From assembly GCA_964252035.1 (NCBI GenBank), contig OZ176201.1: a DNA stretch of 64,000 nt. One strand, 5' to 3'. This DNA is from Podarcis erhardii. Taxonomy: Eukaryota. The position numbers and the translations under genes are program-made. A model generated the notes under the pieces. The model saw nothing but the letters and a program-made list of their open reading frames with translations, searched no databases and was not told the DNA's origin. Below are positions 4,839 through 55,260 of the stretch, piece by piece; position 1 is the stretch's first letter, and each line of letters begins with the position of its first letter.

Positions 4839-5250
4839 TGTAATGGTTGTGAGGGGGTTACTTGTGCGTAAATTGCCTTCAGTTTAGTCAGTTTGTTTGC
4901 TCAACCATGTTTAGGGTTAGAGCTCGCCCTCCGTGACCTGTTAGTCACTTGCAGAATCCGTCAGTGGGCGTTTCTTGAACCTCTTCCAGCATAAAAGCTG
5001 TTTGACCCCAAGTCTCCTCCTATGTTCCCTGCGCGGAACGCGTCTGCGCAAGTGAGGGGAAGGCAGGGGCGTGCCAGCGCTCTCTCCACTAGATTCGGGT
5101 GAAGGGTCTTGGAGCCCTGTCACCAATTCCTCCATCTCCCTCTCTTCTCTATTGGTGTTACGCTGAATTCCTTCCCCTCTGCTGGTCCCCTCTCCGGCAT
5201 CGCTCTGGAGCCCTGCCTCCGCCTCTCGCTCTGATGTCAGTTCCCTGACA
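4839..5250 (-). mobile_element. Solo LTR B
   Basis: TG...CA termini with perfect 5-bp TSD CCAAC (4834-4838, 5251-5255); homologous to 39046-39528. Confidence 0.88.
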
Positions 5251-6971: not shown

Positions 6972-9900
6972 GCATAGAGAAACATTTGTTGATATCAATG
7001 GCTCATCACATAGTTGCAGTAAACTGCAAAGAAAAGCAAAAGTTTTAGATAGTAGGGTGGGTTGCTAAAATGGAATAGGGAGTTATTCCATATAGTTGCA
7101 GTTTCAAGTAGCTCTTATAGCTGTGGCTGGATGTGTGAAACTGGGTGAAAGGCTCCTCTGAGTTTATAGAGTTGGCTACATCCAACATTATTGACCATAA
7201 AGTTAGTTTTTGTGACAACAATGCAAATCTAGAGCCAAATAAATAAATAAAATGTTAGCTTTCATCTGCAAGGGAGTCCTTTTGAAAGTTGAGGGAAAAT
7301 AACACTGCTAGAAGCAGCCGCTGGTTATAGCATAAACAACCAAGGTACTGTATTGAGGACCTCAATTAAAACCAAGTTACTGTTTCTCCTTTCTGTGCTG
7401 ACTTTCCTTTAACAAAAATTATTGTTAAAAATTGTTTCACGCTGTTTTATGGGAAGCTATACAAAAATGAAATAAATAAACTAATACGAAAAATGAAGAG
7501 AGGTGGATCATAGCAAATGTTCACTTCATTGTTAATGTGGAGGGCAGGATCACACAATTATACTGACAAATGCATGTGCAAGAAAATAAATTGATAAATT
7601 TGTAAGGATAAGTGGAAAATCAGTTTCGGAACTGAAGACACGAGAAGACATGCGATTGGATTCTCCTACAGGGTAGACCTACTGAGAATTTCTGTCACAT
7701 GATGAAAAGCAAAATACTATGGATAGTATGAAAGGTAAAAATATACGACAATGGTGGGGATTTTTTTAAAGCATTACATAAAACTCAAAAAGGCACAGCT
7801 CCCTATGTGACTCAGAGCAGAGGAAAAACTACAAAACCCACTCTGAAAGTCCCTAAAAGTTTCATGCATGATACTAGAAAAATTCAGAGGCTGACTGATG
7901 GCCAATTACTTGGTCCTATCTGCAGTGCTACACAAAGGCAGCGCTTGAAAATGCTCCTTACACAGCATGCACCCTTCTGTCATGTGCCTGAATTTATCTG
8001 GCACCAGGTTACTTACTAAATGGAATGATCAGTATCCTATCACATGCTTCGGTCATCAAATGCAACAACTTTCACCCTTGTTCTTCACCAGATAATCCCC
8101 CAAAATATGATCCATATGAACAAGGAACAGGAAGCAGTTTCTTGGAACAGAGAACCACTGCAAAGTATGGAGCAGACAGAGGGCGAGTATAGCTGAAGCA
8201 GTTTGCAGAAAGGAAAGGGTAAGCTTCCTTAAGCAAACAAACCCTTCCCTGCCCCCAGCCTCACAGTACAAACTAGGCAAAGTCTCCTCTAATGTTCCAG
8301 ATGATGCTGTTTTCCTGCGGCTATTGAAAACTGATTTAGCATAACTACCCCAGTGAAGCAGATGGGATTGAATGATAAAGCTCAAGGTGCAGTGGGGGGA
8401 TGCAGCTGCGAGCTGAAACAATCCCTGATGAAATTGTGTTGCTGTAGTTGCAGAGGAGTGTGGGGAGAAGAGAAACAGAAAAGATGTAAGATACAGCCTC
8501 TCCCTTCTTACTTTATAAAGATGCATGTAAATAAAATCAGGGATTAAAAAATAAACTTTTAAATAGTTTATGCTTTGCCTAAGGTTCATTAAACCAGCTA
8601 ATGATTTTGTGTCAACTATTTTGGCTAACTTTTCTCCTTCTTTAAACCCATTACCTACTCCAGGGTGGCCAGCATGCCCTACAGAATTCGCTGCATTCAC
8701 ACTCCAATCACCTCTGGCCCCTGGTCAATTGGCTGAGTCCGATTAGAGTAGAAATTCAACAACATCCAGTTGACATCACTTGACTACCCCTGAACAATGC
8801 AGCAAATGAGTATGAACAAGCTACAGGAAAGTGACCCAACCAAATGTTGAACTCTTTGGAGAAATAAATGGTCCTCATATGCAATTAGAATGGTTACTGG
8901 GGAAAAGTAAAGCCCAACAGGAAATCTGAAGGAATCTTGTTCTCTTACCAGGATTTTACATCAACCAATACTGGGCAAATCTGTCAAGAGGCATCAGAAA
9001 ATATGGCCAGGATTCAAACATTCACTTCCCATGATCACGTAAGAGAGAGGACATCCCTTCCCACCCTGGTGGAATGTGAATCTGGGAGTGACAAGATTAG
9101 GACAAGGATGAGGGCTCCTGTCTCACTGGAGTAGTGATGGAGGGAAATATTTCTCTTCACTCCTGCAATTGTGCTGAGATAAGAGTGGCCACAAATCTCA
9201 GCATGCTTTCAAGGATTAAAATATTCCCTCTCTAAAGTACAGGAGTGGCAGAAGCAGTCACACAAGCAAAGGAAGAAGAGGGTTGGGAAGAGAAGTATCT
9301 TTTAGCTATTGGTTGGCATTGGTGCCCCAACCAGCTAGCTGGTGAAAGGTCCTATTTTTAGATAGATGTGCAAATGTTTGGTATAATTTCAATGTAAATT
9401 TGCATCTAGGATCAGGATTCTTGATGTACTAATGTTTTACTTGTGGGAACTAGTGACTGGCTGGCCACGAGTAACCTTGCACAGTGTCTTCTAAACCAGT
9501 TCTATCTTTCTACATATCATCACTGACACCACACTGGCACAGCAGCCTTTTCACTGTGGTGCTATACATACTGACTACCATTTGTGCAAGAAGAATCAAT
9601 GATCAAATTACCAGGGCCATATCCAGTGCTACAGCTCCGCAATGCCGCAAAAGGCTTGTACAAGAGCATCAGAGCTTCGACTTCCTCTCCTGTCCCCCAT
9701 GTGGCCTCAAAATCAGCTCTAGGGCTGGGAGACCCTCCCAAGTGGATTTTGGTGCTACAGAGGGGAGGAGCGGGAAATGGAAGTCCTGTTGCACCAGCAA
9801 AACTATGCACCTGGAGAATGAAAAACAAACTCCTATTCTCAGACGAAGCACTAAAAAACCCAGATCATTCTGAAAAGTAAAATGTCAGGACATTTCTAAT

Positions 9901-19194: not shown

Positions 19195-19226
<32 letters not shown>
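19195..19226. repeat. (GA)n microsatellite
   Basis: Directly visible; a second G-run plus (GA)n tract lies at about 19714-19750. Confidence 0.95.
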
Positions 19227-19228
<2 letters not shown>

Positions 19229-19423
19229 AAACACGCATACAACATGCCAACTTGCCATCCAGTCATTGTCACGCTACTACCCCCTTATACTCCCGTGTGG
19301 AAGGAAAAGAGCGCACGAACAACGTTTATTTTCGGGCGGGGGGTGGACATTTGCACACAGGAAAGCTTTCAAAACGGCGAGACAGGCGTTAAACAATAGT
19401 TCCCTCTAGCAAACTACTTCCAA

Positions 19424-19648
19424 TTACAGATAGGTAGCCGTGTTGGTCTGCCATAGTCAAAACAAAAAAATTCCTTCCAGTAGCACCTTAAAGACCAACT
19501 AAGTCAGTTCTTGGTATGAGCTTTCGTGTGCATGCACACTTCTTCAGATACACTTCTTCTCTGAAGAAGTGTGCATGCACACGAAAGCTCATACCAAGAA
19601 CTGACTTAGTTGGTCTTTAAGGTGCTACTGGAAGGAATTTTTTTGTTT
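19424..19648. mobile_element. Young Penelope-like element fragment with inverted terminal-repeat structure
   Basis: 13-bp TSD AAACTACTTCCAA (19411-19423, 19649-19661); perfect 89-bp inverted arms 19460-19548 and 19560-19648; GTAGCCGTGTTGGTCTG...GCACCTTAAAGACCAAC typical of reptile PLE ends; hammerhead core present. Confidence 0.8.
19514..19551 (-). ncRNA. Minimal type I hammerhead ribozyme motif
   Basis: Minus strand reads GUAU-CUGAAGA-A-GUGUG(CAUG)CACAC-GAAA-GCU-C-AUAC: stem I GUAU/AUAC, CUGANGA box, 5-bp stem II, GAAA box, palindromic loopless stem III AGCU, predicted CUC cleavage after 19518. Activity untested. Confidence 0.75.
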
Positions 19649-19864
19649 AAACTACTTCCAAGTGATCAATATCTCCCGGACAAAACACAAAACGCCTGGC
19701 TTTAAAATGGTGCGGGGGGGGGGGGGGGGAGAGAGAGAGAGAGAGAGAGAAATCAGCATTTCCACGCAGAAAAGGCAGGCCACTGCCCAAATCAAGCAAG
19801 CAAAAGATATCAGCACAAACTTACAAAGACATAACGCCGGAGCGCGGCGTGAATCTTAAGTTAC

Positions 19865-19949
19865 CTTCATATTGGCGGAGAATGCCAATATTGTTGTTCA
19901 TCTTGTCCAAGTACTGGTAGTTCAACAGGTCCATCTTCATAAATAGCAT
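19865..19949 (-). CDS. VGLL4: VGLL4 alternative first coding exon (MLFMKMDLLNYQYLDKMNNNIGILRQYE-G), 85 nt, phase 1
   Basis: Near-identical to the recalled vertebrate VGLL4 isoform N-terminus; ATG at 19949; donor GAAG|GTAA at 19864. Confidence 0.95.
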
Positions 19950-26117: not shown

Positions 26118-26253
26118 NNNNNNNNNNNNNNNNNNNNNNNNNNNNNNNNNNNNNNNNNNNNNNNNNNNNNNNNNNNNNNNNNNNNNNNNNNNNNNNNNNN
26201 NNNNNNNNNNNNNNNNNNNNNNNNNNNNNNNNNNNNNNNNNNNNNNNNNNNNN
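26118..26253. other. Assembly gap (136 N)
   Basis: N run directly after a G homopolymer. Confidence 1.
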
Positions 26254-27284: not shown

Positions 27285-28656
27285 TAGTCCTGGGCAAGAT
27301 ATTGATACATCACCCAGGACCAGTTTGAGGACCAGAGTGTGATGGCGCCTTCACCCAGCAGTATATCGCAGGGGGCATTTACCTGTGTGTTATCTTCTCC
27401 GGCTTCCTCCCTCTCTGCACTGGGTGGTGGCGGTGGTGGAAGCGGCAGTGGTTTCAGTGCGAGATTGGCTCCATTATTATCAAATACTGGAGGTTTATAA
27501 GATGGATAAGAAAATTGGCTTCCAGGTGGAGAAATCCAAATTGGAAACAGAACTGTTAGAATCCAATACTAAGAATTTGTCAAAAATGTATAACTTGCTG
27601 CTGAAATGGAACACGCAGGATGAAACAGTTAAATCAGCTATGATTAAGTGGGCGCAAGATATTGGTCATAACATTATGTTTGCTGACTGGGAAAGGTTGT
27701 GGACCACCAGTATGAAATTTACGGCGTGTAACGCCTTGAGAGAAAATATTATGAAAATGATTTATAGGTGGTACATGACCCCAGTCAAGCTTGCAAAAAT
27801 TTACCACTTATCAGACAATAAATGTTGGAAGTGTAAAGAAAATGAAGGCTCATTTTTTCACCTCTGGTGGACGTGCCCAAGGATTAAGGCATTCTGGGAA
27901 ATGATATATAATGAAATGAAAAAAGTACACCTTCTTGAAGAAACCAGAGGCCTTTCTCCTGGGTATGGTCAGCCATGTGGTGTTAAAGAAGGATAGAACT
28001 TTGTTTTTGTATGCCACAACAGCAGCAAGGATCCTTATTGCAAAGTATTGGAAGATGCCAGATCTACCCACCTTGGAAGAATGGCAGATGAAAATGATAG
28101 ACTACATGGGACTCGCAGAGATGACGGGCAGAATCCGAGACCAGGAGAAAGAGACAGTGGAAGAAGATTGGAAGAAATTCAAGGACTATCTTAACAAATA
28201 CTACAAGATTAATGAATGTTAGATTGACATGGGTTTAAAAATAATGTGGCTTTCAGAGATGCTGAGTAAGAAAAGGAATGGAATTAATAAAAAACTTTTG
28301 GGAAATAAGGAAATGGATTTGCTGATGGAATAACGAAATTAGAATACAAAACGGGGAGGTATGAGGAAGTTGGGGAAATTAGGTTGAGGAAATAAGGTTC
28401 GAAATTATACTTGTTTTTTGTTTATGTTTGTTTTTATTATTGTTGTTTGTATTTGTAAGTTCTTATTGGAAATTTTAATAAATATCATTTTTTTAAAAAA
28501 AGGAAGCGGCAGTGGTTTTAGCCTGCCACCTCACAGGGCCGGGGCAGATGCTGCTTGTTCCTCCCTCCGCTTTTTAACATCATGATGTATCACTATATTG
28601 AGATGTTTGGCTGGAGATATATCACCATGCTGAGAAGCTGATATCGCCCAGCCCTA
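27285..28656. mobile_element. hAT-type non-autonomous element split by an L1 insertion
   Basis: Termini TAGTCCTGGGCAAGATAT...ATATCGCCCAGCCCTA; 8-bp near-TSD ACACCCAC/GCACCCAC. Confidence 0.7.
27455..28501 (+). mobile_element. 5'-truncated L1 LINE (ORF2 C-terminus with Cys/His knuckle, 3' UTR, A-tail)
   Basis: CWKCKENEGSFFHLWWTC motif; ORF continues after one frameshift near 27930 to a stop at 28222; AATAAA at 28477; 17-bp TSD GGAAGCGGCAGTGGTTT (27438-27454, 28502-28518). Confidence 0.92.
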
Positions 28657-53749: not shown

Positions 53750-55260
53750 GCTCACGCGAAACAAATACTGGGAGACAGCAAGAAGCTGGGTGAGGCATCT
53801 TGCAAGAGCCTTGGCGAGGGAGAGCTCACCGCACGCGGCAGGATCTCCTCTCCACAAACACAGCAAGGAGCGCTGCCTCGATCAGGCAAAAGGAAGAGTC
53901 GCCTGCAGGGTTTGTTCTGTGGAGCAAAGAATTCGGCTGCATTTGGACTAGTGTTAAGTTAGGGGCAAGTTAGCGCCGGCTTAAAAAAAGAAAGAAAAAA
54001 GAAACCGGGGTCTGTTTGCTTTTTAATGCAGCGTGCAAATCTGGATAGCGCCACTCGACCTCCCCCACCCCACCCCCCGCGCTCTTTTGCACATGCATTT
54101 TTAACATTGCAAACATTCTGGGCGCATTCTGGGAGGAAAACACGAGAGCTAAAGAAAGCCTCTTCGCACCTCCTCCTCGGGGTTTGAGTTCAGCTCTAGC
54201 GCGTTATCCCACCAAACAGACAAACAAACAAAAAAGCAGCCAGTCACGCGCGAAGACAGAGTGTGCAGGGCATGTGGCAAGTCTAGACACAACTTTCTGC
54301 AAAAGCACCCGGCCTGCTTTGAGGGAGGCATGGAGCGGCTCCGGCCACCAGCTCCATGCCGGCGCCGCCGGCGCCTCCTCCTCCAGGGGGCCGTGCGCCT
54401 CGCCTCGCCTGCTTGCCTGCCTGCCCGCACATCTCCCTCCAGCAAAGCTCCCCCCCCCCTCGCCCAGCCCCGCGCCGCCCCACCAAGCGCGCCGGGTGAA
54501 GCGGGCTCGGCGAGCTGCAGCAAGCGCAGAGCTCCGTCGCCTCACTCACCAGTTTGCACGAGCTCCGCGCTGCTGGGTCGCTTCCCCCCTGCAGTGCAGA
54601 GCCGAGCTGAGCCGGGCCAGGAGGGGGGCGGAGACCAGCGTGCTCCCGGCGGCGGCGGCGGCTCCAAGCGCCGCTTGCGACTCCCGGCAGCCAAGCTGGG
54701 CTGCGCGGGCTCCGGCCGGAGAGAGCTCCCTGCTTGCTGATTGGGCGAGCGGGCAGGCGAGCGAGCGAGCGAGCGGCTGCTCCCCAAACAATGCGCGCCT
54801 TTGCCGAGTCAGCAGCCGCGCGAGGAAGCCCGCGCCGCCGTGCGCTGCTGGCCCAGGGAAGAATTCCAAGAATGATGGAATTCTCTTCCTAGCAGGTGGG
54901 GAGAGCCGCGCGGCCCCATTGGCTGCGGCGCCCATGAGATCAGCATACATTAGGATAATGAGGCCCTGACATCACATCCTCAGCAGGTAGAAAAGGGGAG
55001 GGCGAAGGGGGAGAGGCAGGAGGTACCTCAGCTGAAGGGAAGAGCCGGGTTGGGGAAGGGAGCCTTGAGCTGCCGTGACCCCTCCGGGGAGGAGGGTCGG
55101 CGCCGGCATTTATAACGCCCCCCCCCCACACACTTCTTCCTCTTTCCTCTGACTCCACCTCCTTTGCTGCAGAGTTTTCAGCGTAACGGGCTCCGGGCGG
55201 GAGGAGAGGAATAAGCGTTCCCCCCCCCCCATCAATTAGATGGGACGTTCCTCTATCCTG
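53750..55260. promoter_or_regulatory. VGLL4: CpG island, main VGLL4 promoter
   Basis: Very GC- and CpG-rich against a CpG-depleted background; CCAAT boxes on the minus strand at 54740-54744 and 54918-54922; (GGC)n and (GCGA)n tracts. Confidence 0.9.
54550..54800 (-). other. VGLL4: VGLL4 non-coding first exon (5' end approximate)
   Basis: Strong donor CTG|GTGAGT at 54549 within the CpG island, upstream of an exon that begins with an acceptor 13 nt before the ATG. Confidence 0.7.

What the first reader, a model, noticed from the sequence alone, without database searches (positions are those of the whole stretch)
19514..19551. Hammerhead ribozyme in the VGLL4 sense strand, apparently locked by its own antisense copy
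Seen: the minus strand (VGLL4 pre-mRNA sense) carries every element of a minimal type I hammerhead, GUAU-CUGAAGA-A-GUGUG/CACAC-GAAA-GCU-C-AUAC, about 310 nt after the donor of the MLFMK exon. The polymerase first transcribes an exact antisense copy (19648-19560) that covers the core. Established: Penelope-like elements carry minimal hammerheads with a short palindromic stem III that cleave efficiently mainly as dimers. Inference: the 89-bp duplex masks the ribozyme, making a potentially cleaving intronic insertion tolerable. Anything that unwinds or edits the duplex could allow co-transcriptional cleavage after 19518 and act as an RNA switch on VGLL4.
Basis: partly seen in the sequence, partly recalled or inferred. 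Interest (0 to 1): 0.8.

Follow-up and report, generated by a model that had tools for sequence, protein, structure and literature searches.

The report
Penelope retroelement fold-back with silent hammerhead
The hammerhead ribozyme motif is really there, but it belongs to a short, young Penelope-like retroelement fragment in a VGLL4 intron. The inverted copy is the usual by-product of how these elements integrate, so this is an ordinary repeat copy and not a demonstrated RNA switch.

Summary
On the minus strand, 19551-19514 carries every conserved hammerhead core position in the "minimal" type I layout of metazoan Penelope-like elements (PLEs). An exact 89-nt antisense copy (19648-19560) lies just upstream, 313 nt after the donor of the VGLL4 MLFMK exon.

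My descriptor finds one hit in the window and none in 300 shuffles. Rfam's hammerhead models do not detect it.

The motif sits in a 225-bp insertion (19424-19648) flanked by a perfect 13-bp target-site duplication. The insertion consists of two inverted 5'-truncated copies and a 36-nt "tail" at one end only. This is the published signature of PLE integration. The 3' end lies 116 nt after the start of stem II, matching the internal reverse-transcription start (111-118 nt) measured for the Anolis element PAc.

The hairpin (-167 kcal/mol) buries the ribozyme; freeing it costs about 51 kcal/mol. But a single minimal hammerhead is inactive anyway, and no partner copy exists in 64 kb. The PAc ribozyme needed its own protein to cleave, and no cleaved ends were seen in Anolis RNA-seq.

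The "switch on VGLL4" has no support.

The scan holds 132 notes on hammerhead/Penelope motifs in this genome, including similar fold-backs in PRKCD, MAPK14 and HTT introns.

The parts
19649..19661 (.). Target-site duplication, copy upstream in VGLL4 orientation (plus strand AAACTACTTCCAA)
   Evidence: Perfect 13-bp direct repeat that abuts the ends of the insertion (family D3).
19560..19648 (-). Inverted (antisense) 5'-truncated copy of the element terminus, 89 nt, without tail. Its plus strand carries a second hammerhead core at 19561-19594 that has only 1 bp of helix I.
   Evidence: Exact reverse complement of 19460-19548. Core string found on the plus strand. Not picked up by descriptors that require helix I of 2 bp or more.
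19549..19559 (-). 11-nt spacer (minus strand GAAGAAGUGUA). It is the 5' extension of the sense copy, forms the loop of the hairpin, and supplies G-U-A of helix I.
   Evidence: During transcription it first pairs with the end of the antisense arm and is then displaced.
19514..19551 (-). Minimal type I hammerhead motif. Helix I is GUAU/AUAC (4 bp). Core is CUGAAGA, followed by a bulged A at 19540. Helix II is GUGUG/CACAC with loop CAUG (G10.1 at 19539). Then GAAA, palindromic G15.2-C16.2, U16.1 and C17 at 19518. Predicted scissile bond is 19518|19517.
   Evidence: Features compared with the list in PMC4209133.
19460..19548 (-). Sense 5'-truncated copy of the element terminus (89-nt arm), in the same orientation as VGLL4
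   Evidence: Stops in all three frames, so this region is non-coding.
19424..19459 (-). 36-nt 'tail', present at the 3' end of the sense copy only. It contains an A/C-rich stretch, CAGACCAACACGGCUACC. The element's 3' end is 116 nt after the start of stem II.
   Evidence: Matches the 30-40 bp one-sided tail of PLEs (PMC8557442) and the PAc reverse-transcription start 111-118 nt after the ORF start, which is also the start of stem II (PMC11167929).
19411..19423 (.). Target-site duplication, downstream copy
19865..19949 (-). Context: VGLL4 alternative first coding exon (MLFMK...RQYEG), with the GT donor at 19864-19863
   Evidence: Translation of the minus strand; sequence.

Best explanation
The feature is one copy of a dispersed lizard repeat: a 225-bp, heavily 5'-truncated insertion of a Penelope-like element (PLE), or of a short non-coding derivative mobilised by PLE proteins. 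It lies in sense orientation in the intron after the VGLL4 MLFMK exon.

Shown:
- The insertion has a perfect 13-bp target-site duplication, two inverted 5'-truncated copies of the same terminus (89 bp exact), and a 36-nt tail at one end only.
- The sense copy carries a complete minimal type I hammerhead of the PLE kind.

Inferred mechanism of origin:
- The PLE endonuclease nicked both target strands 13 bp apart.
- Both 3' ends primed reverse transcription at the element's two internal start sites, 116 and 80 nt after the start of stem II.
- Joining of the two cDNAs produced the fold-back.

Inferred behaviour in VGLL4 pre-mRNA:
- The antisense arm is made first. The 89-bp hairpin zips up from the loop before the 3' half of the ribozyme is transcribed.
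- The ribozyme therefore never folds. Even if it did, it has a 1-bp stem III, would need a partner copy that is absent, and probably also needs PLE protein.
- The hammerhead is thus a passenger relic that is not expected to cleave VGLL4 RNA.
- The only likely molecular consequence is a long intronic double-stranded RNA, a generic substrate for editing or dicing.

Age: identical arms and duplications imply a young insertion, roughly under 7-15 million years at 1-2e-9 substitutions per site per year.
For: Anatomy:
- Exact 89-bp arms, 11-nt spacer, 13-bp TSD and 36-nt one-sided tail.

Published PLE hallmarks:
- High 5' truncation, an adjacent inverted 5'-truncated copy, a 30-40 bp tail often at one end only, and variable TSD length (PMC8557442).
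- PAc nicks and extends both strands and starts reverse transcription internally, 111-118 nt into the ORF, which begins at stem II. The tail is the stretch between the two start sites (PMC11167929). Here the corresponding distances are 116 and 80 nt.

Hammerhead:
- All core positions are present. It also has the four non-descriptor features that Cervera & de la Pena list: a base between 9 and 10.1, G10.1-C11.1, palindromic 15.2-16.2, and a short helix I with a long helix II.
- The motif has the same layout as the experimentally tested PAc motif, read from its sequence: CCU-CUGAGGA-U-stem II-GAAA-CG-U-C-AGG.
- 0 hits in 300 shuffles.
- Pairs of minimal hammerheads on opposite strands 100-700 bp apart are reported.

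Inactivity:
- Hairpin MFE is -167.4 kcal/mol, z = -26.9. Forcing the ribozyme fold gives -116.3 kcal/mol.
- The duplex is at 98% by the time 19535 is transcribed.
- The isolated monomer folds at only -7.8 kcal/mol, z = -0.35.
- A single minimal motif shows no detectable cleavage, and dimers cleave poorly.
- PAc cleavage is protein-assisted, and no RNA-seq ends fall at the site.
- No partner copy in the window.

Abundance:
- 132 scan notes of hammerhead plus Penelope in this genome, including similar fold-backs. These are unchecked leads.
Against: - No reverse transcriptase or GIY-YIG ORF and no second copy in the window. Assignment to PLEs therefore rests on structure and on the motif, not on homology to a full element.
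- No other copies could be fetched, so helices I and II have no covariation support here.
- Rfam hammerhead models give no hit at all.
- Unlike PAc, the region after stem II is closed in all three frames, so the source family differs from the only biochemically studied lizard PLE.
- The 'GUA' of helix I lies in the spacer. I cannot prove it is native element sequence rather than a junction product.
- Inactivity in vivo is inferred from thermodynamics and from other elements, not measured.
Confidence: 0.85

Rival explanations
1. The hammerhead is catalytically competent and held off by its antisense copy. Helicases, editing or other unwinding release it, so it cleaves VGLL4 pre-mRNA after 19518 and works as a conditional RNA switch.
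For: The core is intact and in VGLL4 sense. Masking by the hairpin is real in silico. Retrozyme copies are reported to be depleted from introns in Xenopus, which fits a cost of genic ribozymes (preprint 10.64898/2026.07.22.740005).
Against: - Stem III is 1 bp, single minimal motifs are inactive, and dimers are weak. There is no partner copy in 64 kb.
- Freeing 35 nt costs about 51 kcal/mol.
- The PAc ribozyme needs its own protein, and no cleaved ends were seen in vivo.
- The architecture is the default PLE insertion product and recurs at many loci, so it needs no locus-specific explanation.
- Editing would also alter essential adenosines A6, A9, A13, A14 and A15.1 (inference).
- The insertion is young, with no sign of conservation.
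Confidence: 0.03
2. The relevant activity is the hairpin, not the ribozyme. The 89-bp perfect intronic duplex is edited by ADAR or processed into small RNAs. These could target Penelope transcripts or mildly affect splicing near the alternative first exon.
For: A perfect 89-bp duplex, z = -26.9. It scores against many miRNA-precursor models, though all are far below their gathering scores. Long nuclear dsRNA is a generic ADAR/Dicer substrate (established knowledge).
Against: No Rfam miRNA family is matched at threshold. No expression or small-RNA data are available. Any perfect fold-back would behave the same way, so this would be a by-product, not a function.
Confidence: 0.1
3. It is not Penelope-derived. 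It is either a MITE-like DNA transposon with terminal inverted repeats or a chance hammerhead-like string inside an unrelated palindrome.
For: Long inverted repeats with a TSD superficially resemble a MITE. No PLE ORF nearby. No Rfam hammerhead hit.
Against: - A 13-bp TSD and a 36-nt extension on one side only do not fit cut-and-paste elements (established knowledge) and do fit PLEs.
- The motif meets every minimal-hammerhead criterion, with 0 hits in 300 shuffles.
- The geometry matches the PAc reverse-transcription start sites.
Confidence: 0.02

Closest known systems
Minimal hammerheads (min-HHR) of metazoan Penelope-like elements (Cervera & de la Pena 2014, PMC4209133)
   Same: Type I layout, CUGANGA and GAAA boxes, an unpaired base between A9 and 10.1, G10.1-C11.1, palindromic 15.2-16.2 replacing stem III, a 4-bp helix I and a long helix II. 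They occur mostly as single motifs in truncated copies, sometimes as pairs on opposite strands.
   Different: The two cores here are only 47 nt apart, inside one perfect fold-back. The paper reports reptile examples from turtle and snakes, without sequences available to me. Family-wide covariation could not be checked.
Poseidon_Ac (PAc) hammerhead and integration mechanism, Anolis carolinensis (PMC11167929)
   Same: A lizard PLE with the same ribozyme layout (bulged base, GAAA plus a 2-nt palindrome plus UC). Reverse transcription starts 111-118 nt after the start of stem II (116 nt here). The tail lies between two start sites. Both target strands are nicked and extended.
   Different: - In PAc the ORF starts at stem II. 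Here all three frames are closed after the ribozyme.
- The helix sequences differ, and the palindrome is CG instead of GC.
- PAc copies are typically tandem and full length.
- Only patchy similarity by eye in the downstream region. No alignment was run.
PLE insertion architecture: pseudo-LTRs, inverted 5'-truncated copy, one-sided 30-40 bp tail (Craig et al. 2021, PMC8557442)
   Same: An inverted 5'-truncated copy adjacent to the sense copy, a 36-nt tail at one end only, a TSD of variable length, and a (CT)n(C)n microsatellite about 50-60 nt away.
   Different: Extreme truncation: only 136 + 89 nt remain, with no ORF and no direct pseudo-LTR.
Animal non-LTR retrozymes (PMC7229834; preprint 10.64898/2026.07.22.740005)
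   Same: Short non-coding units with a type I hammerhead, related to PLE termini. The mean consensus length in reptiles is 176 bp.
   Different: Retrozymes are head-to-tail tandem repeats that allow dimeric cleavage and circularisation. This locus has one sense unit plus an inverted one, so no tandem dimer can form.
Conserved intronic hammerheads of amniotes (Rfam Hammerhead_HH9 / HH10; own knowledge)
   Same: A type I hammerhead in the sense strand of an intron of a protein-coding gene.
   Different: Those are ancient, conserved, monomer-competent ribozymes with a stable stem III and loop-loop contacts (own knowledge). Rfam holds models for them, and no Rfam hammerhead family matches here. 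This motif is a young repeat copy.

Membership tests
Hammerhead ribozyme, minimal PLE type (min-HHR) | Conserved core: C3 U4 G5 A6 N7 G8 A9, G12 A13 A14, A15.1-U16.1, H17 | tested here: met
   CUGAAGA ... GAAA-GC-U-C on the minus strand, 19547-19518.
Hammerhead ribozyme, minimal PLE type (min-HHR) | Unpaired nucleotide between A9 and 10.1, and a G10.1-C11.1 closing pair | tested here: met
   Bulged A at 19540. G at 19539 pairs with C at 19526. Criteria taken from PMC4209133.
Hammerhead ribozyme, minimal PLE type (min-HHR) | Stem III reduced to A15.1-U16.1, with palindromic 15.2-16.2 that allows a dimeric helix III | tested here: met
   AGCU. The intermolecular 4-bp duplex is worth only -3.9 kcal/mol.
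Hammerhead ribozyme, minimal PLE type (min-HHR) | Short helix I (4-5 bp) and long helix II (6-8 bp) | tested here: met
   Helix I is 4 bp (GUAU/AUAC). Helix II is 5 bp with a CAUG loop, or 6 bp with a 2-nt loop, at the low end of the range.
Hammerhead ribozyme, minimal PLE type (min-HHR) | Helices supported by compensatory changes among family copies | not testable with these tools
   No other copy in the window. Scans of viral, metagenome and prokaryote collections gave only chance hits or nothing.
Hammerhead ribozyme, minimal PLE type (min-HHR) | Self-cleavage at H17 | not testable with these tools
   Needs in vitro transcription or mapping of RNA ends.
Rfam hammerhead families (Hammerhead_1, _3, _II, HH9, HH10) | Covariance-model score at or above the gathering threshold | tested here: not met
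   No hammerhead hit at gathering score on the whole window, nor at E<=10 on 401 nt or 61 nt.
Penelope-like element insertion | TSD of variable length, 5' truncation, adjacent inverted 5'-truncated copy | tested here: met
   13-bp perfect TSD and exact 89-bp inverted arms. Criteria from PMC8557442.
Penelope-like element insertion | 30-40 bp tail, often at one end only; 3' end at the internal reverse-transcription start site | tested here: met
   36-nt tail at 19424-19459 on the sense copy only. The ends lie 116 and 80 nt after the start of stem II, against 111-118 nt in PAc.
Penelope-like element insertion | ORF with telomerase-like reverse transcriptase and GIY-YIG endonuclease | tested here: not met
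   Not present at this locus or anywhere in the window. This is expected for a 225-bp truncated copy, but it means membership rests on the termini only.
Non-LTR retrozyme | Head-to-tail tandem units, each with a hammerhead | tested here: not met
   One sense unit and one inverted unit, with no direct repeat of the unit.
microRNA precursor families (MIR7533, MIR1222, mir-559 and others) | Score at or above the Rfam gathering threshold | tested here: not met
   Best scores are 75.5 against 230, 63.4 against 90 and 61.6 against 95 bits. These are generic matches to a perfect hairpin.

The most novel reading that the evidence does not exclude
Fold-back integration could be a general self-silencing route that lets sense-oriented Penelope hammerheads persist inside introns. 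At loci like this one, local unwinding together with PLE protein or a trans partner RNA might then permit occasional ribozyme cleavage of the host pre-mRNA, giving a TE-borne conditional cis-cleavage element in VGLL4.
Probability: 0.03. Interest if true: 0.6.

Novelty: new member of a known kind. Interest (0 to 1): 0.15.

Why it matters
For VGLL4 it probably does not matter. The insertion is a young, inert repeat copy in an intron.

Its value is as a clean textbook example. One 225-bp insertion shows every hallmark of Penelope-like integration: TSD, twin inverted copies, a one-sided tail, and a 3' end at the internal reverse-transcription start. It also carries an intact minimal hammerhead.

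The only idea worth carrying forward is genome-wide, not local. One could ask whether sense-strand intronic hammerhead copies are depleted unless they are fold-backs. That test could show whether these minimal ribozymes ever cleave host transcripts.

Tried and rejected
- Rfam 15 at gathering score on the whole window, and at E<=10 on 401 nt and 61 nt. No hammerhead family matched, only sub-threshold miRNA-hairpin hits.
- BLAST of the element against the window, and a 3-mismatch search for the core. No further copies.
- A relaxed hammerhead descriptor (U3-A8 variant, helix I of 2 bp or more, helix II of 3 bp or more). It returned three weak AT-rich hits that look like chance, and no partner for a dimer.
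- Searches for relatives outside the window, to test covariation:
  - The tail string in viral contigs gave two phage coding sequences, a chance match.
  - A hammerhead-to-tail pattern in metagenome contigs gave one GC-rich bacterial coding sequence, a chance match.
  - A hammerhead pattern in prokaryote genomes and viral contigs gave nothing.
  - These collections do not hold vertebrate DNA, so the blanks say nothing about copy number.
- Full-text search for the element's strings in papers returned only unrelated primers.
- The supplements of PMC4209133 are not held. The paper by Lunse, Weinberg & Breaker on dimeric PLE hammerheads is not held and is cited only through the review PMC6765202.
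- A look-up of the scan's notes by sequence was blank.
- Pfam on the three ORFs of 180 aa or more in the window gave no families, so there is no PLE protein nearby.
- I considered aligning the PAc consensus with the element. I did not do it, because it would have meant typing a long sequence. The comparison with PAc is therefore by eye, apart from the distances.

Full report
**What is in the sequence**

Read on the minus strand, which is the VGLL4 sense strand, 19551-19514 is GUAU-CUGAAGA-A-GUGUGCAUGCACAC-GAAA-GC-U-C-AUAC. Every invariant hammerhead position is present: C3 U4 G5 A6 (A7) G8 A9, G12 A13 A14, A15.1, U16.1 and C17.

- Helix I is 4 bp.
- Helix II is 5 bp closed by G10.1-C11.1, with a CAUG loop.
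- Stem III is reduced to A15.1-U16.1 around a palindromic GC.
- The exon MLFMKMDLLNYQYLDKMNNNIGILRQYEG ends at 19865, with its GT donor at 19864-19863, 313 nt upstream.
- The antisense copy at 19648-19560 is exact over 89 nt.

**Is it more than chance?**

I wrote a descriptor with these requirements: CUGANGA; an optional bulge; helix II of at least 4 bp closed by G-C; GAAA; a palindromic insert of 0-4 nt; U followed by a non-G base; and helix I of at least 4 bp. It finds exactly this one site on the two strands of the window and none in 300 dinucleotide-preserving shuffles. The 34-nt core string occurs twice, once on each strand, with 0 expected.

Rfam 15 is blind to it. There is no hammerhead hit at gathering score, and none at E<=10 when only 401 nt or 61 nt are searched. 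The only matches are sub-threshold hits to miRNA-precursor models, which any perfect hairpin produces. The motif is therefore not a member of any Rfam hammerhead family by score. The case rests on the published description of minimal hammerheads.

**What the motif belongs to**

Cervera & de la Pena (PMC4209133) defined minimal hammerheads in the terminal repeats of metazoan Penelope-like elements (PLEs). They listed features that their search descriptor did not impose but that recur:

- a conserved G10.1-C11.1 pair;
- palindromic 15.2-16.2;
- a short helix I (4-5 bp) and a long helix II.

All are met here. The same paper reports that most copies are single motifs in truncated elements, and that some occur as pairs on opposite strands 100-700 bp apart.

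The only biochemically studied lizard PLE is Poseidon_Ac (PAc) of Anolis. Read across its tandem junction, its layout is the same: CCU-CUGAGGA-U-stem II-GAAA-CG-U-C-AGG (sequence, description).

**The surrounding element**

The motif lies in a 225-bp insertion, 19424-19648, bounded by a perfect 13-bp direct repeat: AAACTACTTCCAA at 19411-19423 and at 19649-19661. In VGLL4 orientation the insertion reads as follows:

1. The inverted copy (19648-19560, 89 nt).
2. An 11-nt spacer (19559-19549).
3. The sense copy (19548-19460, 89 nt).
4. A 36-nt extension found on the sense copy only (19459-19424).

The published structural signature of PLE insertions is strong 5' truncation, an inverted 5'-truncated copy adjacent to the sense copy, a 30-40 bp "tail" often at one end only, and a TSD of variable length (Craig et al., PMC8557442). 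This insertion fits all of these.

The PAc study explains the geometry (PMC11167929). The protein nicks and extends both target strands. [quoted passage not shown] The tail is the stretch between two alternative start sites. [quoted passage not shown]

I therefore read the fold-back as the product of priming on both strands at the two start sites, followed by joining of the cDNAs. That step is inferred, not shown.

Further points on the element:

- The sense copy runs 11 nt further 5' than the inverted one. That stretch supplies G-U-A of helix I. This is why only the minus-strand copy has a complete ribozyme, while the plus-strand twin (19561-19594) has 1 bp of helix I.
- All three frames of the sense copy contain stops. 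Unlike PAc, the source is non-coding here. It may be a different PLE family or a non-autonomous, retrozyme-like derivative. I cannot tell which.
- No other copy and no PLE ORF lie in the window.
- Zero differences in the 89 bp of arms and the 13 bp of duplication put the insertion at roughly under 7-15 million years, for 1-2e-9 substitutions per site per year. This is a rough bound.

**Does the antisense arm mask the ribozyme?**

Thermodynamically, yes.

- The 225-nt RNA folds into the 89-bp hairpin at -167.4 kcal/mol, z = -26.9.
- Forcing helices I and II of the ribozyme gives -116.3 kcal/mol, a penalty of about 51 kcal/mol. The equilibrium probabilities are about 1e-19 for helix II and about 1e-35 for helix I.
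- I folded growing transcripts to mimic transcription. A small hairpin first forms between the end of the antisense arm and the spacer. The long duplex is at 98% by the time 19535 is made, before the 3' half of helix II exists.

But masking is not what keeps the insertion harmless.

- The isolated motif folds at only -7.8 kcal/mol, no better than shuffles (z = -0.35).
- Its stem III is 1 bp, and the AGCU/AGCU dimer helix is worth only -3.9 kcal/mol.
- Single minimal motifs showed no detectable cleavage. Dimers and trimers cleaved weakly, mostly at non-physiological Mg2+.
- The PAc ribozyme cleaved only when PAc protein was added, and no RNA-seq reads began or ended at its site.
- Even a relaxed descriptor finds no partner motif in the 64 kb.
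This is an inference from established hammerhead chemistry.

**Verdict on the interpretation**

The identification as a Penelope-type minimal hammerhead and the physical masking both hold. The claims that the duplex is a purposeful lock and that the locus is a switch on VGLL4 have no support. The architecture is the default outcome of PLE integration and is not specific to this gene.

The scan's own notes point the same way. They are unchecked first-reader notes, used only as leads.

- 132 notes mention hammerhead and Penelope in this genome.
- Similar TSD-flanked fold-backs are noted in PRKCD, MAPK14 and HTT introns.
- Young PLE copies with GIY-YIG frames, and a 2.3-kb PLE palindrome, are also noted.
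- A note on this window reports the 89-bp repeat and the 13-bp TSD independently, and I verified both.

**Rivals**

- The hairpin as a generic double-stranded RNA substrate for editing or small-RNA production is plausible as a by-product, but it is untested (about 0.1).
- A MITE or a chance motif is unlikely (about 0.02), given the 13-bp TSD, the one-sided tail, the shuffle control and the match to PAc geometry.

**Limits**

- I could not obtain other copies. The searchable collections are viral or prokaryotic and gave only chance hits. There is therefore no covariation evidence and no link to a full-length element.
- The primary paper on dimeric cleavage by Lunse et al. is not held. It is cited only through a review.
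- The comparison with PAc beyond the ribozyme and the distances was made by eye.

**Novelty and interest**

This is a further copy of a known kind of element in a genome that holds many. The local finding is ordinary.

The one question worth asking is genome-wide: are sense-strand intronic hammerhead copies tolerated better as fold-backs? A recent preprint reports depletion of retrozyme copies from introns in Xenopus, which makes that test reasonable.

Noticed in passing
window 19714-19751 (minus strand: (CT)n followed by a run of C): A (CT)n(C)n microsatellite lies about 50-60 nt upstream of the insertion in VGLL4 orientation, and a (GA)n tract lies at 19207-19227. PLEs are reported to favour microsatellite-rich targets (PMC8557442). 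With a single locus this is only an anecdote.
   Followed up: no
window 19549-19572 (minus strand): The spacer GAAGAAGUG repeats the GAAGAAGUG that runs from the hammerhead core into stem II. It is also complementary to the end of the antisense arm, giving a transient 10-bp hairpin during transcription. It may mark a template switch at the cDNA junction, or it may be native element sequence. This is unresolved.
   Followed up: partly
window 19526-19539 and 19569-19582: Stem II plus its loop (GUGUGCAUGCACAC) is a perfect 14-nt palindrome. Two RNA copies therefore prefer to pair through helix II (MFE dimer -32.6 kcal/mol) instead of through the 4-bp helix III of the classical double hammerhead. 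Whether a domain-swapped dimer of this kind could be active is unknown.
   Followed up: partly
window 26118-26253: A run of 136 N (assembly gap or masked stretch).
   Followed up: no
window 8056-8700 (-), 27385-27996 (+), 54184-54969 (+): These are the only ORFs of 180 aa or more in the window. None has a Pfam match at E<=0.01, so they are probably chance ORFs in intronic or repeat DNA.
   Followed up: partly
window 4941-5250: Another scan note flags a solo LTR with a stop-free ORF of about 100 codons here. I did not examine it.
   Followed up: no
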